Part shown: piece by piece, positions 8,187 to 28,553 of the stretch
Position numbering within the stretch: position 1 is the stretch's first letter
Layout: the number at the start of each line of letters is the position of its first letter
Virus record (IMG/VR): IMGVR_UViG_3300013093_000017
Coordinates: 124,001-188,000 of that record
Strand: one strand, 5' to 3'
DNA length: 64,000 nucleotides
The notes under the pieces: model-generated
Told to the model about the DNA's origin: nothing
Seen by the model: only the letters and a program-made list of their open reading frames with translations
Databases searched by the model: none
Translations under genes and position numbers: made by a program

Positions 8187-9077
8187 ATGAACTACAAACT
8201 ACATTATGAATTATTGATTAAAAAAGCAAAGAATCGTATACTCGATCCGCTGATTAAAGTGGAATCTCATCATATTTTACCAAGATCAATGGGTGGCACC
8301 GATATGAACGAAAATCTAATAGCGTTGTTTCCGAGAGAACATTTAATTGCGCATTTATTGTTATGGAAAATTCATCAATCTAATGCAATGACTAATGCGG
8401 CGTGGCAAATGTCACATAGGAAAATTGGAGATGAATATATTAAAATTAACTCTCGTATATATGAAAAATTAAGAATAGCCTTTAGTGAAACACAAACCAA
8501 AAGAATGGCAGACCCTAAAGTAAGAGAACACTTAAAAAATATTAATTTAGGGCATCCCGTAAGTATCGAAAGCAGACAAAAAATATCTGCCGCACTTACA
8601 GGAAAGAAACAACCAAACGAGTTAGTAGAAAAAAGATCTATAGGTATTAGAAAATATATGTCAGAATCACGTAAAGGAAAAACCTGGGAAGAAATATACG
8701 GTAAAAAAGTTTCTAAAAAAATGAGAGAAGATATCAGTAATGCTAATAAAGGAAAAATACTCACCGATTCCCACAAAGAAAATATTAGCAAAGGAAATAC
8801 TGGTAAGCTGTTATCCGAAGAAACGAAAGAAAAAATATCAACATCTAACAAAGGAAAGGTTAGAACCGAGGAGGCAAAAAAACGAATATCAGAATCCCAT
8901 ATAGGAAAACTATTATCAGAGGAACATAAAACAAAAATAAGTGAATCAAATAAAGGAAAACCTAAATCAGAAGAGACTAAACAAAAAATGTCAGAATCTA
9001 AAAAAGGAAAAACGTTCACTGAAGACCATAAGAAAAAACTTAGTGAAGCAGCAAAACAAAGAAAAAAGAGATTTTGA
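8187..9077 (+). mobile_element. Free-standing HNH homing endonuclease with NUMOD3-like repeats
   Basis: [12 protein letters not shown]...[14 protein letters not shown]; repeated SEETKxKIS...KGK units; very A-rich; own CTAAATA at 8163-8169. Confidence 0.9.
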
Positions 9078-9879: not shown

Positions 9880-10238
9880 TGATTAAGAATATCGTACAAG
9901 CAAGCTCATTCGTAACTGTCAGTAGTTATATGCCTCAGGTATATGGATCAGGCAATATGAGTGGGCAGATGCGATATAATACCAATTCACAATCTGTTGA
10001 AGTATATGACGGAAATAATTGGATTAGTATTAGTCAACAAGCATCAGTTGGATTGAGCTACGAAGCAGAAGAAGCAATGCGCTGGGCCATTAACAAAAAA
10101 CGCGAAGAAGCAGAGATTAAAGAACTAGCAGAGAAACATAAAGCTGTGGCTGCTGCATTAGAAAACCTAAATAAAGCACAAGAACAATTAAAGATAGTAG
10201 CACACTTATCGAAGGATACAGATGAAACAACAAGTTAA
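9879..10238 (+). CDS. Hypothetical protein
   Basis: GQMRYN...VEVYDGNNW motif plus coiled coil; translationally coupled. Confidence 0.6.
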   Translation: MIKNIVQASSFVTVSSYMPQVYGSGNMSGQMRYNTNSQSVEVYDGNNWISISQQASVGLSYEAEEAMRWAINKKREEAEIKELAEKHKAVAAALENLNKAQEQLKIVAHLSKDTDETTS

Positions 10239-11853
10239 CCTAACCCCATTACAGAAAGACTACGCAGTATATCTACCAGCGATTAGTTCATTCTATAGTA
10301 CCTATATCGCCAAACAACGATTAGAGAAATTTATTTCAGATGACCGTATTCCAGCAGGGTTTGATCGCGGTATTGAAGGTATGAATTTCTTAAATCCAGA
10401 AGAAGGATACTTTACCTACAAGTACGGTCTATATTCAGCAGGTCACGCACAGTTAGATTTGCAAAAATCAATTACACAAGAGTCAATGATTCAACAACGT
10501 GATCGTGCCAACACAATGATCTTAGGTGACTCAGGTGGTTACCAAATTGGTAAGGGCGTTCTTAAGTTTGATTGGTTAAATTTTGATGGTCCGGCTGCTA
10601 ACAAAACACGACAAAGCATCTTAGAGTGGTTAGAAATGACTGCTGATTGGTCAATGATGTTAGACGTTCCGACATGGGCATGTGATCGTATCCATAGTCC
10701 AAAGACAGGATTGAAATCTTTTGAAGACTGTTTAGAAAAAACTAGATTTAATAATGACTATTTCTTAAAAAATCGTTTAGGTCATACCAAATGGTTGAAT
10801 GTATTACAAGGTGGTGATTGGGATACTGCGGAGAAATGGTACAACGGTGTTAAAGAATATAGTGATCCAAATGGTCCTTATGCGGGCAGTGAAGCAGAAG
10901 GTTGGGCATTTGGTGGTGCTAATATGTGTAAGATGGACATCACACTTAAACGTCTAATGACTATGCGTGAAGATGGTCTACTAAAAGGTAAGAATTGGAT
11001 TCACTTCTTGGGTACAGCACAATTAGATTGGGCCTGTTACTTAACCAGCATCCAAAGACAAATAAGGAAACATATCAATGAAGAACTTACAATATCGTTT
11101 GATTGCGCATCACCATTCATTGCAACTGCGCACGGGCTTGTCTACACTAATGCACAACATACCCCAAAACGTTGGAGTGTCATTATGGACAAGGCGCCTG
11201 ATAATAAAGCACTTTCAGGTAGCGATATCCCTTTTCCGTTCGAAAGCGAGTTTGGAAGACGGTTAACCATGAAAGATATTGCCTACTATGACCTAGGTGT
11301 GCCAAAAACACAGGAAGAATTAGGCAAGGATGTTAAATTTAATCACTTAAATCCTGAACATTATACAGTAGTTCCAAAACTTAATAAGTTAGGTAAGATT
11401 CCTAACAAAACAAGTTGGGATAGTTTTGCCTATGCATTAATGATGGGACATAATGTTTACTGTCATATTGTTGCTGTACAACGTGCTAATCAATTAGCTG
11501 ACATCGAATCAACGAGATTTAAACCAGATTGGCGTCATTGGAAGAAATTAAACGCAAAAGATTCAGGTGGTGATCAGTTTAGTGATTGGGTTCCTCGTAA
11601 TATATTGTACTTCAATCAATTCATTAAAGAATTGTTTAACACCCAGACTAAAGAAGAAGCGTTTGAGATGATTCAACAGGCTCGTCCATTCTTAACAAGT
11701 TTAGAAGGTGCAAGGCTACAAGGTGGACCTGCTCAAAATACATTTACTAATTTATTTGATGTTGAAGAAATAACTACAGCAGAAGAAGTAGACTTAGAAA
11801 ATCCAGACGATGACGAACTACGTGCATTAGAACAAGGACTAAATGATGAATAG
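10222..11853 (+). CDS. Divergent TGT/DpdA-like transglycosylase (predicted DNA 7-deazaguanine insertion enzyme)
   Basis: TGT-fold motifs in order: GDSGGYQ, MMLDVP, VLQGG, WAFGG, IHFLG, SFDCAS and GHN; neighbours folE and queE. Confidence 0.75.
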   Translation: MKQQVNLTPLQKDYAVYLPAISSFYSTYIAKQRLEKFISDDRIPAGFDRGIEGMNFLNPEEGYFTYKYGLYSAGHAQLDLQKSITQESMIQQRDRANTMILGDSGGYQIGKGVLKFDWLNFDGPAANKTRQSILEWLEMTADWSMMLDVPTWACDRIHSPKTGLKSFEDCLEKTRFNNDYFLKNRLGHTKWLNVLQGGDWDTAEKWYNGVKEYSDPNGPYAGSEAEGWAFGGANMCKMDITLKRLMTMREDGLLKGKNWIHFLGTAQLDWACYLTSIQRQIRKHINEELTISFDCASPFIATAHGLVYTNAQHTPKRWSVIMDKAPDNKALSGSDIPFPFESEFGRRLTMKDIAYYDLGVPKTQEELGKDVKFNHLNPEHYTVVPKLNKLGKIPNKTSWDSFAYALMMGHNVYCHIVAVQRANQLADIESTRFKPDWRHWKKLNAKDSGGDQFSDWVPRNILYFNQFIKELFNTQTKEEAFEMIQQARPFLTSLEGARLQGGPAQNTFTNLFDVEEITTAEEVDLENPDDDELRALEQGLNDE

Positions 11854-12947: not shown

Positions 12948-13187
12948 GTGGCTAATCCAAAATGGCTAAACAAATATCTAACAATAAAGCCAGAAGTACA
13001 TAAGATCTATGATGATCTTGATGCGTGGTTAAACTATTGCAGGTTTAACTTAACCAAGTTTGATCCAGCGGATCTATACAAGTCACCAGCTTGTAAAGAA
13101 TGGCTAGAAAAACGCCGTCGTCGTCAGCAATGGCAACAACGTAATGGTCAGACCAGCAATGGTTATCAAGGTAAGAATCCACGCTAG
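12948..13187 (+). CDS. Hypothetical protein
   Basis: AAGGAG RBS and GTG start. Confidence 0.6.
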   Translation: MANPKWLNKYLTIKPEVHKIYDDLDAWLNYCRFNLTKFDPADLYKSPACKEWLEKRRRRQQWQQRNGQTSNGYQGKNPR

Positions 13188-14011
13188 GAACTGTGAGTAT
13201 ATTGTTCCATTAGTTGAGATAGGGTAATATGGCATTTAGTATTTTTGATAGAATTATCTAAATGCCACAACATACGCAGATTTGTCCAATGCCCTATAAC
13301 CTCAGGAGAGATTCCTTGTTTGAATCCTTCCTCTACAGAAAATATATGATCTAAATGGTATTTGTATCTTGCTCGTGGTAAGTTACTAGGGTTGATTTTA
13401 TAATAATGGGTATGGTAAGATTTAGCAGTAATCTTCTTTACAGCAAGTCTATAAAGTTCTAATTCGCTACGATGCTCGTCACTTACCCAATCACCTGTAG
13501 AAATACGAGATTTTCTAATTTTAGCAGTTACATCTTTTGATTTAGAAGGATTATCTACTCCGTATTTTTCTATACAGGTTTCCTTGTGTTTGTTTTTTAC
13601 CTGTTCAGATTTGAATGGGTTGTCTACTCCATATTTTTCTATACAGGTATTTTTTACTGTATTCCTAAATTCAGTAGATTGAGAGGCAAACTCTGTTCCG
13701 TATTTTGCCAAACAAGCGGCTTTGTATTTTTTCAAGAATGCTGGATTACGATTCCTGCAAGAAGAAGAGCAGTTTTGGGTATACCCGCTCCGGAGTCCGG
13801 TAAATCTTAAAGGGTTAACACGGCATACTGGACATAATATCGGAATGACAGATCCTTCTAAATATAATTCGTGAAATGCTTTTTGAAACAACGGCCATTC
13901 TGAAGGATATTCTGTTAAACAAGTTCCAATATAGTTCTTGATTATAGGTCGTAAATCTGTTATTTTATTTGGATAAGTTTCTATTAACTTTTTTATTTCA
14001 TTTTTAGTCAT
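13184..14011 (-). mobile_element. Free-standing HNH-type endonuclease with KYGxxN repeats
   Basis: CPVC...CSSSC; three KYG(V/T)xx repeats; YHLDHIFS...NLRML...N HNH-like core; antisense to the operon; TATAAATA on the - strand at 14046-14053. Confidence 0.75.
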
Positions 14012-14077: not shown

Positions 14078-15184
14078 ATGAAACCTACAATTTGGATTTT
14101 CTCGCTTGAGCCAATTGAAACCAGATATACAGCACAATGGCATAAACATATTCCAAAACTACTCAAGAACAACTTAGGAGATAAGTTTAATATAGTTCAG
14201 GTTGATGGTATCCAGAAAGACAGCCAACTTACTCCGGGTGCTTTCTTAAACTTTTCAGATACTAACTATTGGAAAAGTTCGCAATTATGTAATTTTTTAG
14301 AGCATCATAATAGAGGAGAAACTTCCACCGACGATCACATCCTTTTTACCGACGCTTGGAATCCTACGGTTATCCAACTCAAATATATGAAGGATCTGTT
14401 AGGCTTTAACTGGACCTTACACGGTATGTTCCACGCGGGGTCATATGATCCTCAGGACTTCTTGGGTAGATTAATTGGTCCTGCGGCTTGGGTTAGAAAT
14501 GCTGAGAAGAGCTTCTTTGCAGCCATCGATCACAACTACTTTGCAACTAGATTCCATATAGATATGTTTGTTGACAATCTACTAGAAAATGGAGTACCGC
14601 GTGAGAATCCGTGGGCTGATGAAGATAAAGCAAGTTTGCTTATGAACTATAAGATTGTACGTAGTGGTTGGCCTATGGAATATATGGAACATACCTTAGA
14701 TATCTATAAAGGTATGCCCAAGCGCGATCTTATCTTATTTCCTCATCGTATCGCTCCTGAGAAACAGGTTGAGATATTTAGAGATCTAGCACAGGCATTA
14801 CCGCAGTTCGAATGGGTTATTTGTCAAGAACAACAATTAACAAAGAACGAATATCACAATCTATTAGGTGAAGCTAAGATGGTGTTTAGTGCTAACCTAC
14901 AAGAAACATTGGGCATTAGTATGTACGAAGGTGCATTACTAGATGCTATCCCAATGGTTCCAGACAGATTGAGCTACAGTGAAATGTTTGCTAATGTTTG
15001 GAAATACCCAAGTGAGTGGACAGAATCATGGGACAGCTATCTTACCCATAGAAAAGAACTATGTGAGCTGATCGTTGATTATATGGAAAATTATAACGAG
15101 TATGTTAAATTTATTAAGCAACAGGCATATAGTTTAACCAAAGAGTTTTTCAATGCTGGACAATTATTAGAGAGATTAAAATGA
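14078..15184 (+). CDS. GT-B fold glycosyltransferase (GT4-like)
   Basis: FPHRIAPEK and the ETLGISMYEG (E-x7-E) signature. Confidence 0.8.
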   Translation: MKPTIWIFSLEPIETRYTAQWHKHIPKLLKNNLGDKFNIVQVDGIQKDSQLTPGAFLNFSDTNYWKSSQLCNFLEHHNRGETSTDDHILFTDAWNPTVIQLKYMKDLLGFNWTLHGMFHAGSYDPQDFLGRLIGPAAWVRNAEKSFFAAIDHNYFATRFHIDMFVDNLLENGVPRENPWADEDKASLLMNYKIVRSGWPMEYMEHTLDIYKGMPKRDLILFPHRIAPEKQVEIFRDLAQALPQFEWVICQEQQLTKNEYHNLLGEAKMVFSANLQETLGISMYEGALLDAIPMVPDRLSYSEMFANVWKYPSEWTESWDSYLTHRKELCELIVDYMENYNEYVKFIKQQAYSLTKEFFNAGQLLERLK

Positions 15185-15951
15185 AGATTGGAATTATCGG
15201 ATTAGGATTCGTAGGTGGTGCTGTTAAGGCAGCGCACGATTTAGTAGGTATTGAAACAGTTGATGTAGATCCTCATAAGGGATTGCCAGCAACATTAGCT
15301 GATGCTAAAGCGTGTGATGCTATCTACATCTGCGTGCCTAGCCCTATTGGATCAGATGGTGCTTGCGATACCAGCATCTTAGAAAACGTTATGGAACAGC
15401 TAACAGATTACACTGGCCCTATCATTAGTAAGGTCACTGCGCCACCTAGCGTATATGTTCGCTTACAAGAAAGTCATAAGAATCTTATTCATGCTCCAGA
15501 ATTCTTAGTTGCGGCAACTGCTAACGAAGATTACATCAACGGTACTTATGCCATTATCGGTGGATATGAACCTTATGCTACTCAGGCAGAAGCGGCTATC
15601 TTGGCAGCGCAACGCCGAGTAACTAACATTACTAAGATCGGAATAGGCGAGGCAGCATTAACAAAATATGCTATCAATACATTCTTATCTACAAAAGTTA
15701 TCTTTATGAATGAGCTAAAGGCACTTGCTGACGCTGCTGGAATTGATTACAATGTAGTTAAAGATACTATTCAGTTTGATTCACGTCAGGGTAATAGTCA
15801 TTTTGATGTACCTGGTCCAGATGGTAAGTTTGGATTCGGTGGTGCTTGCTTTCCAAAAGATACTTCGGCATTATTAAAATACGCTGAAGGATTAGGAGTT
15901 GAGTTAAGTGTATTAGCAAGTGCTGTGGCGAAAAATAAAATCATTCGTTAG
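15181..15951 (+). CDS. ugd: UDP-glucose/GDP-mannose 6-dehydrogenase, short form lacking the C-terminal domain
   Basis: GIIGLGFVG, ICVPSP, PEFL, KYAINTF and GFGGACFPKD. Confidence 0.9.
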   Translation: MKIGIIGLGFVGGAVKAAHDLVGIETVDVDPHKGLPATLADAKACDAIYICVPSPIGSDGACDTSILENVMEQLTDYTGPIISKVTAPPSVYVRLQESHKNLIHAPEFLVAATANEDYINGTYAIIGGYEPYATQAEAAILAAQRRVTNITKIGIGEAALTKYAINTFLSTKVIFMNELKALADAAGIDYNVVKDTIQFDSRQGNSHFDVPGPDGKFGFGGACFPKDTSALLKYAEGLGVELSVLASAVAKNKIIR

Positions 15952-15980
15952 TTGACAGAGCCTAAATAACCCTATATAAT
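15952..15980 (+). promoter_or_regulatory. Consensus sigma70 promoter with embedded late-type CTAAATA, upstream of folE
   Basis: TTGACA-N17-TATAAT exact; CCTAAATA at 15961-15968. Confidence 0.8.
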
Positions 15981-16024: not shown

Positions 16025-16723
16025 ATGGTAGCAAAATACACACCAGTTAGCGAAACTATTCGCAACAACTTAAAGAAAGACAACAAACGTTTCTGGGCTG
16101 GAGATAACATCTCAGAATACATCACAGAAGAAAACAAAGCCCTATTAATTGACGAAGCAACTCTAGCATTTGAAGGTGTGCTTGATACATTGTTAATTGA
16201 TCGTGAAAACGATCCTAACAGTCATGGTACAGCTAGACGTTTAGCCAAAATGTACTTTAATGAGATCATGGCCGGACGTTATGAACCTAATCCAGATGCT
16301 ACAGCATTTCCAAATGACAGCGAAGATCGTTATGAAGGTATGCTAGTAGTTCGCAGTGAACTACGCAGTATGTGTAGTCATCATCACCAACCGGTGGCGG
16401 GGGTTGCGTATATTGGGATTATTGCCGCTCAAAAGCTCATTGGTTTGTCTAAGTACACTCGTATTGCTCAGTGGTGTTCTCGTCGTGGTACTCTACAAGA
16501 AGAACTATGTAATGACATTGCTAGAGAGATTATGAAAGCAACAGGTAGTGAGGATGTAGCAGTTTATATAGAAGCCGAACACGGATGTTGCGTTAATAGA
16601 GGCATAATGGCACATTCGAGCTTAACCCAAACAACTGTATTACATGGTGCGTTTAAGAATGACTCAAGTACCAAAAAAGAGTTCTTTGATAATATCAAAC
16701 TACAAGCAAGAAACGGCAAGTAA
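16025..16723 (+). CDS. folE: GTP cyclohydrolase I
   Basis: SMCSHH, GLSK, LQE, AEHGC and RG motifs. Confidence 0.95.
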   Translation: MVAKYTPVSETIRNNLKKDNKRFWAGDNISEYITEENKALLIDEATLAFEGVLDTLLIDRENDPNSHGTARRLAKMYFNEIMAGRYEPNPDATAFPNDSEDRYEGMLVVRSELRSMCSHHHQPVAGVAYIGIIAAQKLIGLSKYTRIAQWCSRRGTLQEELCNDIAREIMKATGSEDVAVYIEAEHGCCVNRGIMAHSSLTQTTVLHGAFKNDSSTKKEFFDNIKLQARNGK

Positions 16724-17368
16724 ACTAAATCCATTCTCTCTCCAAGTTTTAGAGGAATCGATATTTAGGTGATCAATTTTCTTGCTTGCCCTACCATTGG
16801 TCACAGGGTAAGCATCTAAATTATTATAGATAGTGTTTAATGTCCATTCGGGGATATTTAGAACTTTGTGTATTTCTTTCTTAGTTTTGAATATGCCGAC
16901 TGGAGTAATGAATTTGTCTTTCAAAACACGAGGCGGGATGAAGTCTTTGGCAGCTCTATTTGCTTTCCAAGAGTTTAATCGTTTTTCCTGTATTGTAGGA
17001 TTTTTCATAGGATTATTAATGAGCATACGCAGACGAACTTGCTCAATAAGTTTGGGGGTAGAAAAAATGTTTTCTTTTCCTCGTCGATATCTAGGGCCAT
17101 TAAACGCACTTGATTTATTGAAGAAGCCATAAGCGTGACGCATTTTAATTTCATCTTGGAAATTATCCTGCATTTTGATTAGAAGGCAATGACACACTCG
17201 ATGTTCTTTATAGGTTAAATCTACTAAATTAGTAGGATCGTTTGTTCCACCTAACGATTTAGGAATGATATGATGGCATTGATTAAATTTAGAAGATTTT
17301 GTTCTATTTTCATTTAATGCTCTTGTAATTATTCTATAATATGTTATACTATATTTGTTAGTAATCAT
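16700..17368 (-). mobile_element. Free-standing HNH homing endonuclease
   Basis: CHHIIPKSLGGTNDPTNLVDLTYKEHRVCH; GAGG RBS before ATG 17368; GATAAATA on the - strand at 17395-17402; overlaps the folE 3' end. Confidence 0.88.
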
Positions 17369-17429
17369 AATACGCCTCATAAATTCTATATTATTATTTA
17401 TCTGGTTGTTGCGAAAATAGAGGTATTAA

Positions 17430-17645
17430 ATGAACGAGAAGATTAAACAACTTGCTGAACAGGCTGATAATTTTGCTGATGATAAAATTCGGATGCCTGG
17501 AGAATATCACCCAGATTGGCATGATGTGCGAGATGAAAAGTTTGCCGAGTTGATTGTTAAGGAATGTAGTAATTTCTTGAAAGATACATTGGACGATCAT
17601 TTTGCGGCAGAACAGTTAGAAGAACATTTCGGAGTTGAAGAATGA
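17430..17645 (+). CDS. Small phage protein (MNEKIKQLAEQA...EKFAELIVKEC...EHFGVEE)
   Basis: GAGG RBS; ATG start; 71 aa. Confidence 0.7.
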   Translation: MNEKIKQLAEQADNFADDKIRMPGEYHPDWHDVRDEKFAELIVKECSNFLKDTLDDHFAAEQLEEHFGVEE

Positions 17646-17743
17646 ACACAACTGTTCTTAAGGGTGCATTTAAATCTGATCCAGATACTAAGAAAGAGTT
17701 CTTTGACAATATTAAACTTCAACAGGAATTTGCTCCAAGATGA
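17642..17743 (+). pseudogene. Displaced duplicate of the FolE C-terminus (33-aa ORF)
   Basis: MNTTVLKGAFKSDPDTKKEFFDNIKLQQEFAPR* versus FolE TTVLHGAFKNDSSTKKEFFDNIKLQ: 21 of 25 residues identical. Confidence 0.85.
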
Positions 17744-17976
17744 TAGGCGCTGACGTAGTATGGTTTGGTGTAGGATTAGTCTTTGGAATATTCTTTGGCC
17801 TTAACCTTTACAATGATCGCAAGGCTAGTGATAAACAAAAGGCCTACGAACAAATAGATGAGCAGGTACGTAAAGATCTTATTCGCTATAAGAACATGAG
17901 CGAAAGTTTGTTAGAAGATGTTAAATTTTGGCGTCATCGCGCTAATACATTAAGAGATATAAAGGAAAAGAAATGA
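17740..17976 (+). CDS. Small membrane-anchored protein
   Basis: Hydrophobic N-terminus VVWFGVGLVFGIFFGL followed by coiled coil. Confidence 0.6.
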   Translation: MIGADVVWFGVGLVFGIFFGLNLYNDRKASDKQKAYEQIDEQVRKDLIRYKNMSESLLEDVKFWRHRANTLRDIKEKK

Positions 17977-18530: not shown

Positions 18531-18868
18531 GTCAAATATTTCTCCCCGCTGGTGCATCTGCTAACAAGTCTGGTAATAATACCGTGATTGGTGGCGCTAT
18601 TAACAATATTACCATAGCAAATGGTGGTACAGGATATGGGGCTGGAAGCAACACTACATTTAGCGGTGCTGGTACAGCTGGTACAGTAGGACCGACAGGA
18701 ACTTTTGGATGGTCTTATACCGATCAACAGCACGAGTGGATGTTAGAATATAAACTCGATCCTATTAAAATGGGCCTGATGTGTGAAAAATTTCCAGCAC
18801 TAGCTAAGAGTTGGAGTCAGTTTAAAATGTTGTATAATCTATGTAAATCGGAAGAAGAGAATGGATAA
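18527..18868 (+). CDS. Hypothetical protein with Gly/Thr-rich N-terminal half
   Basis: Coupled ORF; MCEKFPALAKSW C-terminus. Confidence 0.55.
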   Translation: MSQIFLPAGASANKSGNNTVIGGAINNITIANGGTGYGAGSNTTFSGAGTAGTVGPTGTFGWSYTDQQHEWMLEYKLDPIKMGLMCEKFPALAKSWSQFKMLYNLCKSEEENG

Positions 18869-19382
18869 GAGACGAATCAGTTTTGAAGAATATCGAGGAT
18901 ATGTTGGCGCTATCTGCCGAGATATCACTATTAGCGATTGGATGCCTGATTATGTAGTAGGTGTTACTCGCGGCGGATTACTGGCTGCTACAATGATCAG
19001 TCATTACTTTAAGATCCCAATGCATACATTAAAAGTAGCCTTACGTGATCACGCAGACACAGAAAGCAATCTTTGGATGGCAGAGGATGCATACGGATAC
19101 AACGGCGAGGTAGGTGATCAAGTTGCTAAAAACATTTTGATTGTAGATGATATTAACGACACTGGCGAAACACTAAACTGGATTATGAAAGATTGGCAAA
19201 CTAGTTGCTTACCCAGCGATGCTCGATGGAATCATGTTTGGAATCAAAATGTAAAGTTTGCTACAATTGTAGATAACTTAGATAGTGATTGCAAGGTTAA
19301 GATGGACTATGTTGGTTTTGAAATTAATAAAGCAGAGGAAGATGTTTGGATTGATTTTCCTTATGAATCTTGGTGGGAATAA
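18861..19382 (+). CDS. Purine phosphoribosyltransferase (Gpt/Hpt-like)
   Basis: VGVTRGGL, the PRPP loop ILIVDDINDTGET, and WIDFPYE. Confidence 0.88.
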   Translation: MDKRRISFEEYRGYVGAICRDITISDWMPDYVVGVTRGGLLAATMISHYFKIPMHTLKVALRDHADTESNLWMAEDAYGYNGEVGDQVAKNILIVDDINDTGETLNWIMKDWQTSCLPSDARWNHVWNQNVKFATIVDNLDSDCKVKMDYVGFEINKAEEDVWIDFPYESWWE

Positions 19383-19396
19383 CTAAAGGAACTATT

Positions 19397-20116
19397 ATGG
19401 CTACAAAGAAACAAAAAGAAGAGTTAATGGAAACACTTAAATTCACTCCACGTGAATATAAAATTGAAATTGGCGCATATGGTGGCGAAGTTTATTTTGG
19501 TACTGTAGATCGCAAGATTTATGATTTCTTTAAAGAAAAGAAAATTGACATTGAAGAATATGCAAGTGATTGGGATGATGAGAAATGGGCCGATATCCCA
19601 GAAGACATGCGTCCATTTGAACCAGGCAATGCTTACGATTGTTCCAATCTAGCACATAACAGTGGCGCAACATTTGATGAAGGTAACACTGTTGAAGTCT
19701 ATGATGAAAATGGTGACAAAGTTTGGGAGTGTGTATTAACTACCGAAGCACTTGAAGCCGAAGGGGTTACTGTGGTATGTGATGAAGAAACCTACATCAG
19801 TGAACAGCCAGAAGGCACTGTGGTATTCTATGGTGCTCAAGGTGAAAAAGGTCTTCTATTTGGCAATGACTTTCCATTAACCTCACCATTTGATCCTAAG
19901 AAACTTACAATTAACTATGGTGACTTCGATGGTTGGGAAATGGTTATCAGTGTGTTGTATGATGGCGAAGACATTGACAACTACAATCTAGACACTACAG
20001 GTAAATGGGCTGAATCTAAGTGGATCATTGTTGGAGACGAAGAAGTCTACGAAGGTGAAACTCGCGGCGATGAAGAAGATGAGGATGAAGATGAAGAGGA
20101 TGACAACGAAGAATGA
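19397..20116 (+). CDS. Highly acidic hypothetical protein
   Basis: AAGGA RBS before ATG 19397; D/E-rich tail. Confidence 0.65.
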   Translation: MATKKQKEELMETLKFTPREYKIEIGAYGGEVYFGTVDRKIYDFFKEKKIDIEEYASDWDDEKWADIPEDMRPFEPGNAYDCSNLAHNSGATFDEGNTVEVYDENGDKVWECVLTTEALEAEGVTVVCDEETYISEQPEGTVVFYGAQGEKGLLFGNDFPLTSPFDPKKLTINYGDFDGWEMVISVLYDGEDIDNYNLDTTGKWAESKWIIVGDEEVYEGETRGDEEDEDEDEEDDNEE

Positions 20117-20286
20117 TCCTTAGCAACTATGCCCACGAAAATAGAACAGCAAATGTTTGCAAACAGAGCGGAGAGTATGTTATAATGTGTTATGAAGATG
20201 GGCATTACATACGTTCAGAAATAGCATTAAGTGAAACATCAGCTGATGATATTGCAGAAGATTGGGTATTTAAAAGTGATAACTAA
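20113..20286 (+). CDS. Small hypothetical protein (57 aa, not in ORF track)
   Basis: ATGA overlap; MILSNYAHENR...ADDIAEDWVFKSDN*. Confidence 0.55.
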   Translation: MILSNYAHENRTANVCKQSGEYVIMCYEDGHYIRSEIALSETSADDIAEDWVFKSDN

Positions 20287-20548
20287 CAAAACACAAGAAG
20301 CATTGATTATTCTGCAGGAAGAATGTGCTGAAGTAATACAGGCAGCTAGTAAAATATATCGATTTGGGCTAGATAATTCTCACAAATCAGGCCTTACCCA
20401 ACGAGCTAATTTAGAAATGGAAATTGGCGATATGCTGTCCCTGGTAGATATTTTAGTTGAGCAAGGTGTTCTAGACCTAAATAATTTAAACACTGCTAAA
20501 TTAAACAAAATTGAAAAACTTAAAATATGGTCAAAATTATATGAGTAA
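20276..20548 (+). CDS. MazG-like NTP pyrophosphohydrolase
   Basis: LQEECAEVIQA...LEMEIGD (EExxE...ExGD); probable GTG start at 20276. Confidence 0.75.
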   Translation: MITNKTQEALIILQEECAEVIQAASKIYRFGLDNSHKSGLTQRANLEMEIGDMLSLVDILVEQGVLDLNNLNTAKLNKIEKLKIWSKLYE

Positions 20549-21383
20549 AATTAAAGTAGCAGAGCTGTTTTACAGCATACAGGGCGAAGGTCGCTATATG
20601 GGAGTACCTAGCGTGTTCCTTAGAACTTTTGGCTGCAATTTTTCTTGTAGGGGCTTCGGTATGGGTAAAGGGCAATTGAGTGAAGAATACTTAACTGTTA
20701 ATCCAGAACTATACACAAAATATGATGAACTTCCACTAGTTAGTACAGGGTGCGATAGTTATGCTAGTTGGGATCCACGCTTTAAGCATTTAAGTCCAAT
20801 GTTAGAGTCAGATGCTATTGCAGAAGCAATTGCAGATATGTTGCCTTATAAAGATTGGAATGACGAACATTTAGTTATCACAGGCGGCGAGCCTTTGCTA
20901 GGATGGCAACGTGCTTATCCAGATCTATTAGATCATCCCAAAATGAAGAATCTAAAAGAGATCACATTTGAAACAAATGGTACTCAAGAATTATCACCAG
21001 AACTTAGAACATATCTACTCAATTGGCAAAGTGAAAACTTTGATAGAGAAGTAACTTTTAGTGTAAGTGCTAAATTAAGTGCAAGTGGTGAACATCCAGA
21101 CGAAGCAATTAAACCTGAGATTGTGTGTTCGTATGAAGAAGCAGGTTATACATATCTTAAGTTTGTTATTGCAACAGAAGAAGATGCAGAAGAAGCATTA
21201 GAAGCCGCAGATATCTATCAACAAAATGGGTTTACTGGTCCAATTTATCTAATGCCAGTCGGCGGGGTTGAAAGCGTTTATGCATTAAACAACCGTCGTG
21301 TAGCAGAATTAGCAATGAAACACGGCTTGCGATATAGTGATAGGCTGCAAGTTCCGTTATTTAAAAATGAATGGGGTACATAA
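20541..21383 (+). CDS. queE: 7-carboxy-7-deazaguanine synthase (radical SAM)
   Basis: ELFYSIQGEG, FLRTFGCNFSC...GCDS (CxxxC with a long insertion before the third Cys), ITGGEP, ETNG and RLQ. Confidence 0.9.
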   Translation: MSKIKVAELFYSIQGEGRYMGVPSVFLRTFGCNFSCRGFGMGKGQLSEEYLTVNPELYTKYDELPLVSTGCDSYASWDPRFKHLSPMLESDAIAEAIADMLPYKDWNDEHLVITGGEPLLGWQRAYPDLLDHPKMKNLKEITFETNGTQELSPELRTYLLNWQSENFDREVTFSVSAKLSASGEHPDEAIKPEIVCSYEEAGYTYLKFVIATEEDAEEALEAADIYQQNGFTGPIYLMPVGGVESVYALNNRRVAELAMKHGLRYSDRLQVPLFKNEWGT

Positions 21384-22478
21384 TTGAGTTATCTATTTAC
21401 ATCAGAATCTGTTAGTGAAGGACATCCGGATAAAGTAGCAGATGCTATTAGTGATGCTATTTTAGACCTAGTTATGGTACACGAAGATCCAAGTATGCGG
21501 GTTGCTTGCGAAACTTTAGTTACTACTAATCGTGTTGTACTTGCAGGAGAGTATAAAAATGTTGCCCTACACAATGCGCAGATCGATAGTGCTGTAAGAA
21601 AAGTTATCAAAAATATTGGCTACGAACAAGAAGGATTTGATTGGCGTACAGTTGAGATCACTAACTTATTACATGCACAAAGCGCAGACATTGCACTCGG
21701 TACTGATAACTTCGGAGCAGGCGATCAAGGACTGATGTTTGGGCACGCTACTAAAGAAACTCCGAACTATATGCCTGCGGCGATTTATTACAGCCATAAG
21801 ATTATGGAATATTTGACAACAATGCGTAAAGGTGGGCAAACTTGGTTAGGTCCAGATGCTAAAGCACAGGTAACATTAAATTACATTGGTAATAAAGCTC
21901 GTTATGCTACTAAGATTGTATGTTCAACTCAGCATAGTCAAGGTGTAGAAGTTGAAGAGCTACGTCCTGTAATTGAAACTTATATTAGAGAGTGTGTTCC
22001 GGAGATTATCACAGATGCTACCGAATTTCTTATCAATCCTACTGGTCGTTTTGTCATTGGTGGGCCCGACGGTGATACTGGCCTCACCGGACGAAAAATT
22101 ATCGTGGATACCTACGGTGGCAGTTGTCCTCATGGTGGCGGTGCTTTTAGCGGCAAAGATCCTACAAAAGTTGATCGTAGTGCCGCTTATATGGCTAGGT
22201 ACTTGGCTAAGAACATTGTAGCCAGCGGTCGCGCAAATGTAGCAACTGTTCAATTAAGCTATGCTATTGGTGTTGCTGATCCAATGAGTGTGTACATTGA
22301 CTGCGATGGAAATTGCGAAGGCATTAGAGATTGGATAATTAAACATGTTGATCTAACTCCAAAGGGTATTATAGATAGATTTAATATGTTTCGTCCTATC
22401 TATAGTCAAACTACTAACTACGGACACTTTGGCAAAGATTTTTTGCCTTGGGAAGCTGTAGATTTATTTAAGGTGTAA
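21384..22478 (+). CDS. metK: S-adenosylmethionine synthetase
   Basis: FTSESVSEGHPDK, GAGDQG and GGGAFSGKD; TTG start directly after the queE stop. Confidence 0.97.
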   Translation: MSYLFTSESVSEGHPDKVADAISDAILDLVMVHEDPSMRVACETLVTTNRVVLAGEYKNVALHNAQIDSAVRKVIKNIGYEQEGFDWRTVEITNLLHAQSADIALGTDNFGAGDQGLMFGHATKETPNYMPAAIYYSHKIMEYLTTMRKGGQTWLGPDAKAQVTLNYIGNKARYATKIVCSTQHSQGVEVEELRPVIETYIRECVPEIITDATEFLINPTGRFVIGGPDGDTGLTGRKIIVDTYGGSCPHGGGAFSGKDPTKVDRSAAYMARYLAKNIVASGRANVATVQLSYAIGVADPMSVYIDCDGNCEGIRDWIIKHVDLTPKGIIDRFNMFRPIYSQTTNYGHFGKDFLPWEAVDLFKV

Positions 22479-22479
22479 T

Positions 22480-22968
22480 ATGAATATTATTCAAACATTA
22501 TTTGAAAAAGTTACGGGCATTGATAAGATACGTGCTAAAGCGGCTGCAGAAGCAGAAGCGGCTATTCAATTAGCCCTAGAAGCACAAGCTGAGGCAAAAG
22601 CATCTTCATTAGCAGCAGAAGAAGCAAAGGCAGAAGAAGTCGCAGCAAAAGAAGCAGAGCGTATTGCTAAATTAACGCCAAAAGAACTTGCTACAGAAAA
22701 GAAAGAGCCTTACATTGCAGTATTAGATACCAAAGTAAATCCAGAGAATCCTCGTAATGGATTTTTTGAGCTTGATTGGAATGAATATTTTATCATGCAA
22801 TTGAAAGAAGCAGGCTATTATGGTGAAACAGATGAAGAACTAGCAGATCGTTGGTTCCAAGATTTGTGTCGCAATATTGGTGCAGAATCAGGTGTAGATA
22901 TGGATCGTAGAGGTGCAGGATACATTAATGTAAATGATTTAGGTAATGGTAAGTCAGAGATTAGTTAA
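22480..22968 (+). CDS. Hypothetical phage protein
   Basis: Ala/Glu-rich N-terminal half; NGFFELDWNEYF core. Confidence 0.65.
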   Translation: MNIIQTLFEKVTGIDKIRAKAAAEAEAAIQLALEAQAEAKASSLAAEEAKAEEVAAKEAERIAKLTPKELATEKKEPYIAVLDTKVNPENPRNGFFELDWNEYFIMQLKEAGYYGETDEELADRWFQDLCRNIGAESGVDMDRRGAGYINVNDLGNGKSEIS

Positions 22969-23627
22969 TGTCAAGATTAACAGAGTGGCTCTACGGTATT
23001 CAACAACTAGGTTTACAAATTGATACAGTATATGATATTGGTGCCTGCGTAGGCAACTGGAGCCGCGAGATACAAGATAAAGTTTGCCCCAATGCAGACT
23101 TTATCCTGTTTGAAGCTAACCCTGCATATAATGAAATTTTATCTAATAGCAAATTCCGCTATTTCAATACAGTCCTAAGCAATCCCGGTAGAGAGTTTGT
23201 CGAATTCTACAATGGAACAAACACCGGCGATAGTTACTATAAAGAAAATACCACAACATACGACAATCAAACAACTGTTAGATTGCTCTGCTCCACACTT
23301 GATGCTATAATAAATGAATACAACCTGCCAATTCCTAATCTTATTAAACTTGATACACAAGGTTCTGAATTAGATATTTTAGCAGGGGCTGAATCTATTG
23401 TAGATAAAGTAGATTTAATGTATGTAGAATGTCCAATTATAAACTATAATATTGGAGCACCTAGCATACAAGATTATTTAGATTACTTTAAGAACAAAGA
23501 GTTTGTGCCAGTTGATTTACTTGAAACGCATCAAAACGAGAATATACTATTACAAGTTGATATTATGTTTATGAAAAGAGAAACCAAAGAAAGGATCTTA
23601 ACTCCAACCCGTCAGGTAAGGATTTAA
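22968..23627 (+). CDS. FkbM-family SAM-dependent methyltransferase
   Basis: VYDIGACVG, FEANP and IKLDTQGSEL. Confidence 0.88.
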   Translation: MSRLTEWLYGIQQLGLQIDTVYDIGACVGNWSREIQDKVCPNADFILFEANPAYNEILSNSKFRYFNTVLSNPGREFVEFYNGTNTGDSYYKENTTTYDNQTTVRLLCSTLDAIINEYNLPIPNLIKLDTQGSELDILAGAESIVDKVDLMYVECPIINYNIGAPSIQDYLDYFKNKEFVPVDLLETHQNENILLQVDIMFMKRETKERILTPTRQVRI

Positions 23628-23633
23628 TACAAT

Positions 23634-24620
23634 ATGACATTCATTTTAGTAGACACAGCAAATACATTCTTTCGAGCAAGACATGTAGTACGTGGAGACA
23701 ATAGCGAAAAGGTAGGAATGAGTTTACAGATTATTTTAAACTCAGTACGCAAAGCATGGAAAGACTTTAACGGCACTCATGTTATTTTCTTCCTAGAAGG
23801 CCGCAGTTGGCGCAAGGATCATTATCCTCCCTACAAAAGACAACGTACAGAAGCTCGCGCAGCTCAAAGTCCAAGTGAACAAGAAGAAGATCGTATCTTT
23901 TGGGAAACGTTTGATGAATTTAAAGCATTTGTTACAGAAAAAACTAACTGTACAGTATTACAGCATGAACAGCTTGAAGCAGATGATTTAATTGCAGGGT
24001 GGATTCAAAGCCACCCTAATGACAATCATGTTATTATTAGTACAGACGGTGACTTTGCTCAATTGATTGCACCTAATGTTCGTCAATATAACGGTGTTGC
24101 TGGTGTTACTATCACTCACGAAGGGTACTTTGACGACAAAGGCAAACCAGTAATTGATAAGAAAACTAAACTAGCCAAAGAGATTCCAAATCCAGAATGG
24201 TTGTTATTTGAAAAATGCATGCGTGGTGATACTAGCGATAATATCTTTAGTGCATATCCAGGTGTGCGCACAAAAGGTACTAAGAACAAAGTAGGGTTAA
24301 TAGAAGCATTTGCAGACCGAGATAGTAAAGGTTGGGCGTGGAACAATTTAATGTTACAACGTTGGGTTGATCACGAAGGTGTAGAACATCGAGTGTTAGA
24401 CGATTATCAACGTAATCAACTATTATGTGATCTAACAGCACAGCCCAAAGAGATTAGAAAATTAATCAAAGAAACAATCGAAACTGGCATAACTGCTGAC
24501 AAAAATGTCAGCCAAGTAGGTATTAGATTATTAAAGTTCTGCGCAAGTTATGATCTTGTTAAAGTATCAGAACAAGCGCAAAGCTATGCAGCCCCATTAA
24601 ATGCGAGATATACACAATGA
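23634..24620 (+). CDS. T4 RNase H-like 5'-3' exonuclease
   Basis: LVDTAN, YKRQR, EADDLI, ISTDGDFAQL and GDTSDNI. Confidence 0.9.
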   Translation: MTFILVDTANTFFRARHVVRGDNSEKVGMSLQIILNSVRKAWKDFNGTHVIFFLEGRSWRKDHYPPYKRQRTEARAAQSPSEQEEDRIFWETFDEFKAFVTEKTNCTVLQHEQLEADDLIAGWIQSHPNDNHVIISTDGDFAQLIAPNVRQYNGVAGVTITHEGYFDDKGKPVIDKKTKLAKEIPNPEWLLFEKCMRGDTSDNIFSAYPGVRTKGTKNKVGLIEAFADRDSKGWAWNNLMLQRWVDHEGVEHRVLDDYQRNQLLCDLTAQPKEIRKLIKETIETGITADKNVSQVGIRLLKFCASYDLVKVSEQAQSYAAPLNARYTQ

Positions 24621-27299: not shown

Positions 27300-28553
27300 A
27301 TGTCAGTAATGAAAGCAGAAAAAGTTAAGAAGCCAACAAAGACACGTGAGTATTCACCTGCTGAAAAGAACAAGATTATTGAAAAACTTGTAACTGCTCG
27401 GGTTGGGTTGCTATTACGACATCCTTTCTTTGGCAATATGGCTACACGTATGCAATTAATTGATGCAAGTGATTGGTGTAGTACACTTGCTACAGATGGT
27501 CGCAACTTCTATTATAACAACGACTTTGTCAGCAAATTAAAGCCTAAAGAAGCAGAGTTCGGATTTGCACACGAAGTATTACATAACGTGTTTGACCATA
27601 TGGGTCGTAAAGGTGACCGTGATCATCAATTGTCAAACATTGCCGCAGACTATGCTGTAAATCAAATTCTTAAAGATGAACGCATCGGTGAAGTTCCTAA
27701 CTGGATCAAAATTTTCCAAGACAATAAGTATCGTGGTATGAGCTACGAACAAATTTATGACGACTTGTATCAAAATGCCGAAAAGATCGACATTAGTTCG
27801 TTAGGCGAGATGTTAGACGAGCATTTAGATGACGGCGAAGGTGAAGACGGTCAAGGCAACGGCGGCGACCAAGAAGGTAAGAGCGGTCGTCCTAAACTAA
27901 CAGCAGAAGAAAAGAAAGCTATCCGCGATGAAATCAAAGAAGCTATGGTAGCGGCTGCTCAAAGTGCAGGTGCTGGTAAATTGCCAGCAGGTATCCGCAG
28001 ATTAATTACAGACTTTACAGAACCGCAAATGGACTGGCGTGAATTGTTACGTATGAATATCCAAAGCATTATGAAAAGTAACTTTAGTTTTAGTCGTCCA
28101 AATCGTAAGAGCCAACATTCAGGTGCTGTATTACCAGGCATGACTAACGAAGAAACTATTGATGTAAGCGTAGCAATTGATATGTCAGGTAGTATCAGCG
28201 ATAAGATGGCTAAAGACTTCTTAAGCGAAGTTAAAGGCATCATGGATGAATACGTTGACTTTAAATTAGACTTATGGTGTTTTGATACACAAGTTTACAA
28301 CTATGCTAAATTCTCAGGCGATACTGCTGACGAAATTATGTCATACGAAGTTAAAGGTGGTGGTGGTACAGACTTCGATGCAAACTACGAGTTTATGAAA
28401 GAAAACGAAATTGAGCCAAAACGCTTTATTATGTTTACTGATGGATATCCGGCCGGATCTTGGGGGGACGAAAACTATTGCGAATCACTATTTGTTATTC
28501 ACGGTAATGATTCAATTATTCCACCGTTTGGGCAGGTTGCGTATTATAAGTGA
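27300..28553 (+). CDS. Metallopeptidase-vWA domain protein (MoxR partner, DUF2201-like)
   Basis: AHEVLH (HExxH); MIDAS DMSGS, GGGGTDF and FTDG. Confidence 0.88.
   Translation: MSVMKAEKVKKPTKTREYSPAEKNKIIEKLVTARVGLLLRHPFFGNMATRMQLIDASDWCSTLATDGRNFYYNNDFVSKLKPKEAEFGFAHEVLHNVFDHMGRKGDRDHQLSNIAADYAVNQILKDERIGEVPNWIKIFQDNKYRGMSYEQIYDDLYQNAEKIDISSLGEMLDEHLDDGEGEDGQGNGGDQEGKSGRPKLTAEEKKAIRDEIKEAMVAAAQSAGAGKLPAGIRRLITDFTEPQMDWRELLRMNIQSIMKSNFSFSRPNRKSQHSGAVLPGMTNEETIDVSVAIDMSGSISDKMAKDFLSEVKGIMDEYVDFKLDLWCFDTQVYNYAKFSGDTADEIMSYEVKGGGGTDFDANYEFMKENEIEPKRFIMFTDGYPAGSWGDENYCESLFVIHGNDSIIPPFGQVAYYK

What the first reader, a model, noticed from the sequence alone, without database searches (positions are those of the whole stretch)
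16631..17743. FolE C-terminus exists twice: a recoded replacement and a displaced copy with its own start
Seen: 16631-16705 and 17648-17722 encode 25 residues with 21 identities, and 10 of those 21 use different codons. Between them lie an antisense HNH gene and a small ORF. The downstream copy has a GGAG RBS, an ATG at 17642 and an intact 33-aa frame coupled to the next gene. Inference: the endonuclease arrived with a recoded, cleavage-resistant folE 3' end that displaced the original. The remnant may persist for translational coupling or as a peptide acting on the FolE oligomer.
Basis: partly seen in the sequence, partly recalled or inferred. Interest (0 to 1): 0.6.

Follow-up and report, generated by a model that had tools for sequence, protein, structure and literature searches.

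The report
Homing endonuclease replaced phage folE end
A selfish homing-endonuclease gene entered the end of a lake phage's folE gene with its own differently spelled copy of that end, pushing the original end downstream, where it probably survives because it holds the next gene's translation start signal; this kind of event is known, but here it is unusually well documented.

Summary
16631-16705 and 17648-17722 encode 25 residues with 21 identities, 10 of them through different codons. It is incomplete: a third piece of the displaced copy, GCCENRGI, lies at 17404-17427. The 71-aa ORF therefore sits inside the displaced copy.

In the 85 alleles compared, 71 end ...QQEFAPR-like. Seventy of those have no endonuclease gene. 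One (L005) has the same downstream gene joined by ATGA. A diverged phage (L085) shares window ~16511-17440 at 94-100% identity, while its flanks are 50-82% identical. The transferred unit is thus about 200 nt of foreign folE 3' end, an antisense Mob-type HNH gene and its upstream region.

The 14 replaced-tail alleles differ from native ones only at 16571-16606, around the catalytic His/Cys codons. This is the likely target site. The left edge of the displaced copy falls inside it.

HNH-less alleles ending RNGK/N carry deletion scars or only the replaced tail. Every remnant keeps KLQQEFAP(R/L)* with ATGA, and in native alleles this tail serves as the next gene's ribosome-binding and start region.

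Cleavage, immunity and translation were not tested. This is a new phage member of a kind known from fungal mitochondria.

The parts
15952..15980 (+). Sigma-70-type promoter-like site (TTGACA-17-TATAAT, 12/12) ahead of folE
   Evidence: a consensus match only, function not tested
16025..16723 (+). Hybrid folE (GTP cyclohydrolase I, 232 aa): native body plus foreign 3' end
   Evidence: Pfam PF01227, E = 1.3e-40. Aligns with E. coli FolE, including the His179/Cys181 equivalents. Mosaic structure shown.
16511..16723 (+). Foreign (co-converted) 3' tract of folE. The left edge is approximate, a homologous crossover somewhere in 16490-16540.
   Evidence: Identity to L085 rises from 0.82 to 0.94-1.00 here. 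Mismatch rate to the closest native relatives rises from 0.15-0.17 to 0.23-0.29.
16571..16606 (+). Candidate endonuclease target site in its presumed immune spelling (IEAEHGCCVNRGI; native alleles read IQATHGCCENRGI)
   Evidence: The only cluster of nucleotides that separates 71 native-tail alleles from 14 replaced-tail alleles. It spans the catalytic His and zinc-ligand Cys codons. Cleavage was not tested.
16583..16705 (+). Copy A of the duplicated segment (GCCVNRGIMAHSSLTQTTVL...KLQ), part of the functional gene
16706..16723 (+). New FolE tail ARNGK plus stop, encoded antisense to the C-terminal codons of the HNH gene (..LLAVSCL)
   Evidence: It lies beyond the Pfam domain, which ends at residue 224.
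16700..17380 (-). Free-standing Mob-type HNH homing endonuclease gene. The probable true start is the ATG at 17368 (MITNKYS, GAGG 7 nt upstream), as in L085. Its tail overlaps folE by 24 nt.
   Evidence: Pfam HNH 23.3 bits against a cut-off of 21.4. PHROG 655 'homing endonuclease', E = 1.1e-19. tblastn hits to MobE and other homing endonucleases of T4-like phages. 99% identical in L085, 42-68% in six other folE-linked loci.
17394..17401 (-). ATAAATAA motif just 5' of the HNH gene, conserved as (T/G/C)ATAAATA in all related cassettes; possibly a T4-late-type promoter
   Evidence: TATAAATA is not enriched in the window as a whole, so the promoter role is only a guess.
17404..17427 (+). Relic of the displaced native folE copy (GCCENRGI). 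Its left edge lies between the His and Gly codons of the candidate target site.
   Evidence: The same relic sits 5' of the HNH gene in L085, L025, L057/L063, L086, L012 and L084.
17430..17645 (+). orf71, a member of a very large family of small uncharacterised phage proteins, inserted inside the displaced copy where MAHSSLTQ would be
   Evidence: No Pfam or PHROG hit. More than 1100 related protein clusters. Family members occur in tandem with ATGA overlaps in lake metagenomes.
17642..17743 (+). 33-codon remnant ORF. An ATG-AAC start of the same form as the orf71-family start is fused to the displaced native folE end: copy B at 17648-17722, native tail QEFAPR plus stop at 17723-17743.
   Evidence: Copy B is 93% identical to native L008 and 89% to L006. 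A junction of the same kind occurs in L069 and L085.
17740..17976 (+). 78-aa gene. Its ATG overlaps the remnant's stop (ATGA), as it overlaps the folE stop in the empty-site relative L005.
   Evidence: 228/254 nt identical to L005.

Best explanation
A free-standing Mob-type HNH homing endonuclease gene occupies the 3' end of folE in a large freshwater myovirus that has a T4-type DNA polymerase.

The mobile unit is about 0.9 kb (window ~16511-17440). It holds a foreign, differently spelled copy of the last ~70 folE codons, a new 5-residue tail encoded antisense to the endonuclease's C-terminus, the endonuclease gene itself and its short upstream region.

Inferred steps:
- The enzyme cuts endonuclease-free folE alleles near the His/Cys active-site codons (native spelling ...CAT GGT TGY TGT GAG AAT CGT GGC ATT).
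- Repair copies the donor's immune spelling together with the endonuclease gene.
- The gene downstream of folE varies between phages, so at some point the right-hand break end was joined without homology. The recipient's own folE end, from the cut site to the stop codon, was left downstream as a displaced copy.

That copy has since been interrupted by orf71. It persists at least partly because its last codons (KLQQEFAPR, with AGGA and an ATGA overlap) are the ribosome-binding and start region of the next gene.
For: Shown:
- The duplication and its codon pattern; the third piece of the displaced copy.
- HNH identity.
- 71 of 85 related alleles end ...QQEFAPR-like, 70 of them without an HNH gene. 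L005 is an exact empty site with the same downstream gene.
- The cassette is 94-100% identical to L085 while the flanks are 50-82% identical. Copy B is only 76% identical between the window's copy and L085's functional gene, and 89% between the two remnants.
- Lake runs from other studies hold 16370-17690 but not the flanks. They also hold contigs that fit up to 16705 and then continue with a native QDFAPR tail.
- All 14 replaced-tail alleles differ from all 71 native alleles within 16571-16606 and nowhere else before the tail.
- Seven folE-linked HNH genes of 42-99% identity all lie antisense and overlap the folE end.
- Degenerate and deleted stages carry scars.
- In an independent cultured pair, Vibrio phage phi-ST2 (with a mob-like HNH) and phi-Grn1 (without) are near-identical except for a ~140-nt respelled folE 3' tract that starts just before the same His/Cys motif.
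- Native folE tails act as the next gene's start region: 40 of 71 end in ATGA, and AGGA in the tail is associated with that overlap (32/8 against 5/26, p = 7e-8).
Against: No cleavage, immunity, transcription or translation data exist.
- The closest endonuclease-free relatives are themselves only ~83-85% identical. The native/foreign call for the 75-nt copies alone is therefore statistically modest (5 against 15 mismatches to L008, p = 0.03; other relatives p = 0.17-0.36).
- The near-identity with L085 ends in the 5' end of orf71, not in the remnant. The most recent transfer therefore went into a genome that already carried the orf71-remnant structure, so the original duplication event is reconstructed, not observed.
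- One locus (L084) has an HNH gene next to a native-type folE end, and L088 lacks the relic.
- The ATGA/AGGA association is not corrected for relatedness.
Confidence: 0.8

Rival explanations
1. The 33-aa remnant is kept because the peptide itself is functional, for example by inserting into or modulating the FolE oligomer. It corresponds to the last strand and the C-terminal helix of FolE.
For: All four long remnants (window, L085, L069, L088) have an ATG, an open frame and no stops. They differ from each other with pN/pS 0.06-0.25, like functional copies at 0.17. A GGAG lies 7 nt before the ATG.
Against: The same pN/pS is expected if each remnant was recently displaced from a functional gene, or is refreshed by recombination with native alleles. 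Copy B is 93% identical to a functional relative. Other cassettes keep only ~10 codons (L025, L057/L063, L012) or none (L086), and phi-ST2 has no remnant. The start codon and GGAG have the same form as the orf71-family stop/start junction seen in tandem family members, not a dedicated signal. No binding test was run.
Confidence: 0.07
2. The duplication arose in place, as a tandem duplication of the folE end that then diverged. The endonuclease gene and orf71 landed between the copies later, and no foreign folE sequence was imported.
For: Both copies encode nearly the same peptide. Synonymous divergence (76% nt identity) could in principle accumulate in place.
Against: Copy A and the HNH gene are 99-100% identical to L085, whereas the 5' part of folE is 82% identical and copy B 76-89%. 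Copy A carries the class-specific substitutions shared by all 14 replaced-tail alleles, and these alleles are scattered among native alleles in the folE body. The new tail is the antisense of the HNH C-terminus.
Confidence: 0.04
3. The arrangement is a metagenome mis-assembly that joins two phage strains at the conserved folE end.
For: The window comes from an uncultured virus contig. The region holds sequences that are highly repeated in lake metagenomes: the orf71 motifs reach very high summed depth and show many joints.
Against: The same arrangement is found at 99.98% identity in a second IMG/VR contig (L087). It also appears in contigs from two separate public runs that bridge 16448-17457 and 16639-17754 without a difference. 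The same architecture recurs in L085, L088, L025 and L069.
Confidence: 0.02

Closest known systems
Mobile endonuclease ORFs (mORFs) that create 'gene hybrids' in fungal mitochondria: Allomyces macrogynus atp6; Glomus atp6, atp9, cox2 and nad3 (PMC3630166)
   Same: An endonuclease ORF arrives with a foreign C-terminal coding segment that replaces the host gene's end in frame. The native C-terminal segment is left downstream. The native piece is closer to relatives (91-98% nt) than the inserted piece (64-81%), with mostly synonymous differences. That is the pattern seen here.
   Different: Here the host is a phage, not an organelle. The endonuclease is a Mob-type HNH, not LAGLIDADG or GIY-YIG. 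It is encoded on the opposite strand, and its C-terminal codons overlap the new gene tail. The displaced piece is split by another small gene and ends in a stop-start overlap with the next gene.
Free-standing homing endonucleases of T4-type phages (MobE, SegF, SegG and others) with co-conversion of flanking markers (reviewed in PMC2988022; mobE in PMC2790892)
   Same: A free-standing HNH gene lies next to a conserved metabolic gene. It is present or absent among relatives, and a tract of flanking sequence is inherited with it. The presumed target lies in the neighbouring gene at some distance from the insertion point. The N-terminal HNH region is 30-42% identical to annotated MobE and other homing endonucleases.
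   Different: A search of the T4 mobile-elements review found no occurrence of 'duplicat', 'remnant' or 'pseudogene'. No activity data exist for this enzyme.
Mob-like HNH gene next to GTP cyclohydrolase I in Vibrio phages phi-pp2 and phi-ST2 (PMC3468402, PMC5107563)
   Same: Same host gene, same antisense orientation and a 29-nt overlap with the folE end. Comparison with phi-Grn1 shows a ~140-nt respelled 3' tract that starts just before the His/Cys motif, and a changed tail.
   Different: The endonuclease is only distantly related (37% over ~100 residues). No displaced folE copy is left behind. The searched passages of those papers note the gene's position; the searches were not designed to find any mention of a respelled tract.
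Integrative elements that carry a replacement 3' end for the gene they integrate into (e14 and phage 21 in E. coli icd; many elements in tRNA genes). From my own knowledge, not checked here.
   Same: The incoming element restores the target gene with its own, synonymously different 3' end. The original end remains as a displaced fragment at the far junction.
   Different: Those elements use site-specific integrases and attachment sites. This element has no integrase and is expected to move by break repair.

Membership tests
HNH homing endonuclease, free-standing Mob type | HNH catalytic motif in the N-terminal part of the protein | tested here: met
   Pfam PF01844 at residues 31-53, 23.3 bits against a cut-off of 21.4. 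PHROG 655 'homing endonuclease', E = 1.1e-19, residues 4-100. The sequence reads ..CHHIIPKSLGGTNDPTNLVDLTYKEHRVCH...
HNH homing endonuclease, free-standing Mob type | Free-standing gene (not in an intron or intein), present or absent at the same site among related genomes | tested here: met
   70 endonuclease-free native alleles, including the exact empty site L005. Seven occupied loci. One degenerate locus and several deleted ones.
HNH homing endonuclease, free-standing Mob type | Flanking host sequence moves with the gene (co-conversion tract) | tested here: met
   Window 16511-17440 is 94-100% identical to L085 inside 50-82% identical flanks. Contigs from other lakes hold the cassette without the flanks.
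HNH homing endonuclease, free-standing Mob type | Site-specific cleavage of the endonuclease-free allele, and immunity of the carrier allele | not testable with these tools
   Only a candidate site (16571-16606), derived from class-specific substitutions.
HNH homing endonuclease, free-standing Mob type | C-terminal DNA-binding module (zinc finger, NUMOD or similar) | tested here: inconclusive
   No Pfam or PHROG match beyond residue ~116. The C-terminal half is conserved among the folE-linked relatives (67% identity over 224 residues in L025). No fold was predicted.
Endonuclease-borne C-terminal replacement ('gene hybrid') with displaced native end | Inserted C-terminal segment in frame with the host gene and more divergent from relatives than the displaced one | tested here: met
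   Copy A has 15-16 mismatches per 75 nt to L006, L008 and L009, against 5-9 for copy B. Copy A is 99% identical to L085.
Endonuclease-borne C-terminal replacement ('gene hybrid') with displaced native end | Displaced native end contiguous with the native downstream context | tested here: met
   The QEFAPR stop / ATGA / 78-aa gene junction is as in L005, 228/254 nt identical.
Endonuclease-borne C-terminal replacement ('gene hybrid') with displaced native end | The hybrid gene is the expressed, functional copy | not testable with these tools
   The frame is intact, the Pfam domain is complete to position 178/179, and the catalytic motifs are present. No suitable RNA data: the only RNA run held 0.05 of the words.
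GTP cyclohydrolase I (FolE) | Full-length domain with zinc and catalytic residues | tested here: met
   PF01227, E = 1.3e-40, covering profile positions 11-178 of 179. Alignment to E. coli FolE (1fbx) covers the CSHHH motif and the His179/Cys181 equivalents.
Translationally coupled gene pair (stop-start overlap) | ATGA overlap with a Shine-Dalgarno-like sequence inside the upstream coding tail | tested here: met
   The remnant ends CAACAGGAATTTGCTCCAAGATGA. In native alleles AGGA in the tail goes with the ATGA overlap (32/8 against 5/26, p = 7e-8). Actual coupling was not measured.

The most novel reading that the evidence does not exclude
The duplicated folE pieces may be working parts of the mobile element, not just debris.
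- The relic at 17404-17427 begins inside the candidate target site and lies next to the HNH gene's upstream motif in cassettes whose enzymes are only 42-68% identical. It would mark the cleavage position.
- It could also serve as a short right-hand homology arm, as could the longer remnant.
- It could be a non-cleavable operator for the endonuclease, as described for I-TevI.

A cassette that carries target-gene homology on both sides could home into any folE, whatever gene follows it. This would explain how one element family spreads through phages whose folE neighbourhoods all differ.
Probability: 0.3. Interest if true: 0.6.

Novelty: new member of a known kind. Interest (0 to 1): 0.42.

Why it matters
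The locus shows several stages of a homing-endonuclease life history at one site in uncultured lake phages: empty, occupied, degenerate and deleted with scars.

It gives a precise, testable prediction of the enzyme's target: about 36 bp around the catalytic His/Cys codons of folE. It also predicts the substitutions that would confer immunity.

It shows that C-terminal replacement with a displaced native end, described for fungal mitochondria, also occurs in phages. It offers a concrete reason why the displaced end is not lost: it carries the translation start region of the next gene.

For annotation, the 33-codon ORF should be labelled a displaced folE fragment, and the functional folE a hybrid gene.

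Tried and rejected
- Megablast of the region against GenBank phages found nothing. Relatives came from IMG/VR instead.
- At nucleotide level the 3' ends of replaced-tail alleles do not cluster together, apart from window-L085 and L014-L025. Synonymous sites are saturated. I therefore could not show a single origin for all foreign ends, and rely on amino-acid and codon markers.
- I considered a T4-type late promoter for the HNH gene. The (T/G/C)ATAAATA motif is conserved 5' of all related HNH genes, but TATAAATA is depleted in the window overall (3 found, 11.9 expected). The promoter reading stays a guess.
- In phi-ST2 a KHYCV-like stretch lies 5' of the HNH gene, a possible relic of the same motif. 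It matches 12 of 18 nt. By my own rough binomial estimate this is not beyond chance for the number of positions compared, so I do not count it as evidence.
- Other candidate mobile ORFs in the window have no displaced copy of the neighbouring gene's end. These are the HNH+NUMOD3 ORF after the DNA polymerase and the two antisense DUF7487 ORFs.
- orf71 has only one copy in the window's own genome record.
- I did not run a complex prediction of the remnant peptide with FolE. I do not claim binding, and a fragment of a protein placed back on that protein would be uninformative.
- No usable RNA run was found, so expression is untested.
Full report
**1. What is in the sequence**

The window belongs to a 230-260 kb uncultured freshwater myovirus. 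Its DNA polymerase and baseplate genes are of T4 type, and the closest cultured polymerase is that of Sinorhizobium phage Phosso at 50%.

- 16025-16723 (+) encodes a complete GTP cyclohydrolase I (PF01227, E = 1.3e-40). It aligns with E. coli FolE through the CSHHH motif and the His179/Cys181 equivalents.
- 16700-17380 (-) encodes an HNH protein. It passes Pfam's HNH cut-off, matches PHROG 655 'homing endonuclease' (E = 1.1e-19), and finds MobE-type and other homing endonucleases of T4-like phages by tblastn. Its last eight codons are the antisense of the last FolE codons and stop codon.
- 17430-17645 (+) is a 71-aa ORF with no family match.
It shares ATGA overlaps with both neighbours.

**2. 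The observation**

The two 75-nt segments give 21 of 25 identical residues, 10 of them with different codons. Nucleotide identity is 57/75, and the differences fall 5/2/11 on codon positions 1/2/3. The second copy is found at E = 4.9e-10 when the FolE C-terminus is searched against the window.

17404-17427 reads GGTTGTTGCGAAAATAGAGGTATT = GCCENRGI. It matches 16583-16606 of the functional gene and, more closely, the native spelling in relatives. The displaced copy therefore originally ran from the Gly after the catalytic His to the stop codon, about 49 codons. The 71-aa ORF sits inside it, in place of MAHSSLTQ.

Independent contigs confirm the arrangement.

**3. Relatives**

A scan of IMG/VR with FolE returned 80 loci at 80-91% protein identity. 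A scan with the HNH protein returned five more, one of which (L087) is the window's own genome.

Of the 85 alleles compared, including the window, 71 end ...KLQQEFAPR or a close variant. Seventy of these have no HNH gene. The exception, L084, carries a 43%-identical HNH. L005 is an exact empty site: the folE stop overlaps the start of the same 78-aa gene, and 228 of 254 nt match window 17723-17976.

**4. What moved**

L085 is a diverged phage. The neighbouring UDP-glucose dehydrogenase-like protein is 63% identical, and flanking DNA is 50-82% identical. Yet window ~16511-17440 is 94-100% identical to it. Identity falls again inside the 5' end of the small ORF.

The same left boundary appears against the closest endonuclease-free relatives, L006-L009:

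| Comparison with L006-L009 | Mismatch rate or count | Note |
|---|---|---|
| Window 16073-16510 | 0.15-0.17 | folE body |
| Window 16511-16705 | 0.23-0.29 | p = 3e-4 to 0.13 |
| Copy B (75 nt) vs L006, L008, L009 | 5-9 mismatches | 93% identical to L008 |
| Copy A (75 nt) vs L006, L008, L009 | 15-16 mismatches | |

(All.)

Contigs of two lake metagenomes from other studies hold 16370-17690 at 99% or more in the cassette part, but not the flanks. They also hold contigs that fit up to 16705 and then continue CAAGACTTTGCACCTCGATGA, a native QDFAPR tail.

The recently transferred unit is therefore the foreign folE 3' end, the new tail, the HNH gene and its upstream region. The downstream copy belongs to the resident genome.

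**5. A family of folE-linked endonucleases and its life history**

Seven loci carry intact HNH genes 42-99% identical to this one. All lie antisense and overlap the folE end. The replaced tails differ: QARNGK, QSRNGK, QQQVGGKGVY and QTNSSLSSYR. One locus, L084, has a native-type tail.

The HNH-less alleles ending RNGK or RNGN are not counter-examples:
- L089 keeps 28 C-terminal HNH codons.
- L011 keeps ...SWRENGFD in antisense.
- L044 and L057/L063 keep a few codons.
- L069 keeps about 60 nt of an L012-type HNH end, plus the last codons of the small ORF and a 33-codon remnant.
- L014 and L020 keep only the tail.

In the folE body these alleles are scattered among native alleles, as expected if the 3' end moves with the endonuclease.

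An independent cultured example exists. Vibrio phages phi-ST2 and phi-Grn1 are nearly identical through folE up to a ~140-nt tract full of synonymous changes. It starts just before the His/Cys motif and is followed in phi-ST2 by an altered tail and an antisense mob-like HNH gene. The position of that gene has been noted in the literature (PMC3468402, PMC5107563).

**6. Candidate target site (inference)**

I compared the 71 native-tail alleles with the 14 replaced-tail alleles. Every strongly discriminating nucleotide before the tail lies in 16571-16606 (one weaker one lies at 16552). None lies between 16607 and 16705.

| Feature | Native-tail alleles | Replaced-tail alleles |
|---|---|---|
| Motif | I-Q-A-T/V-H-G-C-C-E-N-R-G-I | I-E-A-E-H-G-C-C-(T/V/L/I)-N-R-G-I |
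| Arg codon | CGN | mostly AGR |
| Ile codon | ATY | mostly ATA |
| HGCCENRG intact | 71 of 71 | 0 of 14 |

The site spans the codons of the catalytic His and the zinc-ligand Cys. Homing endonucleases typically exploit conserved sequence of this kind; that statement rests on general knowledge of the family.

The left edge of the displaced copy (17404) falls between the His and Gly codons of this site. The same relic lies 5' of the HNH gene in L085, L025, L057/L063, L086, L012 and L084.

My reading is that the relic's edge marks the break. At the founding event the left end was repaired from the donor through the endonuclease gene. The right end, lacking downstream homology because the gene after folE differs between phages, was joined as it was. 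This is a reconstruction, not an observation.

The latest transfer between the window and L085 lineages ended in the conserved 5' end of the small ORF. It therefore went into a genome that already had the structure.

**7. Why the displaced end persists**

In native alleles, 40 of 71 folE stops overlap the ATG of the next gene, and that gene belongs to at least a dozen different families. An AGGA inside the tail codons (CAG GAR) goes with the overlap: 32/8 against 5/26, p = 7e-8, not corrected for relatedness. The folE tail therefore doubles as the start region of whatever gene follows.

Every remnant, even the shortest, keeps KLQQEFAP(R/L) with the ATGA: the window, L085, L069, L088, L025, L057/L063 and L012. 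In L085 a further inserted gene also ends ...KQEFAPR with ATGA.

The window's remnant starts with ATG-AAC, which overlaps the stop of orf71. That junction, with GGAG 7 nt upstream, has the same form as the stop-start junction by which members of this very large small-ORF family follow each other in tandem in lake metagenomes. The result is a chain of coupled frames: orf71, the remnant, the 78-aa gene and the 68-aa gene.

The remnants differ from one another with pN/pS 0.06-0.25, like functional copies. This fits recent displacement or refreshment from functional genes. It does not require a functional peptide.

**8. Verdict**

- Its main inference is supported by comparative evidence.
- 'Cleavage-resistant' remains untested, but now has a defined candidate site.
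- Translational coupling is the better supported of the two suggested reasons for persistence.

The closest precedent is the endonuclease-borne C-terminal replacement in fungal mitochondrial genes (PMC3630166), together with the co-conversion biology of free-standing T4 endonucleases (PMC2988022, PMC2790892). I file this as a new member of a known kind, of moderate interest. The open and more novel question is whether the duplicated pieces act as built-in homology arms or as an operator.

Noticed in passing
window 8187-9077 (+): A second free-standing homing-endonuclease-like ORF (NUMOD3, E = 1.1e-16; weak HNH) lies directly after the DNA polymerase gene (5467-8139). No displaced copy of the polymerase end follows it.
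   Followed up: partly
window 13184-14011 (-) and 28516-29142 (-): Two antisense ORFs with DUF7487 sit among plus-strand genes. Each is preceded by one of only three TATAAATA sites in the window (14046 and 29148, minus strand). They may be further mobile ORFs with T4-late-type promoters. No displaced gene ends lie next to them.
   Followed up: partly
window 17430-17645; L085 (reverse complement) 3208-3459; lake runs X1, X3, X8, X9: orf71 belongs to a very large family of small uncharacterised phage proteins (more than 1100 clusters). The family has conserved N-terminal (MNEKIKQLAEQA), middle (FAELIVKEC) and C-terminal (EHFGVEE) motifs and variable stretches between. In metagenome contigs members follow each other in tandem with ATGA overlaps. 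Function unknown.
   Followed up: partly
L085 (reverse complement) 3560-4027: A 155-aa ORF inserted between the folE remnant and the homologue of the 78-aa gene also ends ...KQEFAPR with an ATGA overlap. The folE-tail start region has therefore been duplicated a second time. This suggests that this ~20-nt junction is a recurrent site of gene insertion.
   Followed up: no
window 16571-16594 versus native alleles: In replaced-tail alleles the Glu after the Cys-Cys pair is lost (to T/V/L/I), while Glu appears at two positions just before the catalytic His (Q to E, T/V to E). This looks like a compensating shift of an acidic residue around the active site.
   Followed up: no
window 8107-8136 and 11821-11850: The DNA polymerase and the 543-aa protein (10222-11853) share a C-terminal NTF(S/T)xLFD(F/V)E motif. 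It may be a sliding-clamp-binding tail.
   Followed up: no
window 14078-15951 and 18861-24620: folE sits among sugar and nucleotide modification genes: a UDP-glucose dehydrogenase-like gene, a phosphoribosyltransferase, a QueE-like radical SAM gene, a SAM synthetase and an FkbM-type methyltransferase. This fits a 7-deazaguanine-type DNA modification pathway.
   Followed up: partly
L004 (Vibrio phage phi-ST2) 3802-3833: 5' of the phi-ST2 HNH gene lies AAGCATTACTGTGTTAAT (K H Y C V N), next to a perfect TATAAATA on the HNH strand. It resembles the folE KHYCVK motif (12 of 18 nt), but by my rough estimate not beyond chance.
   Followed up: partly
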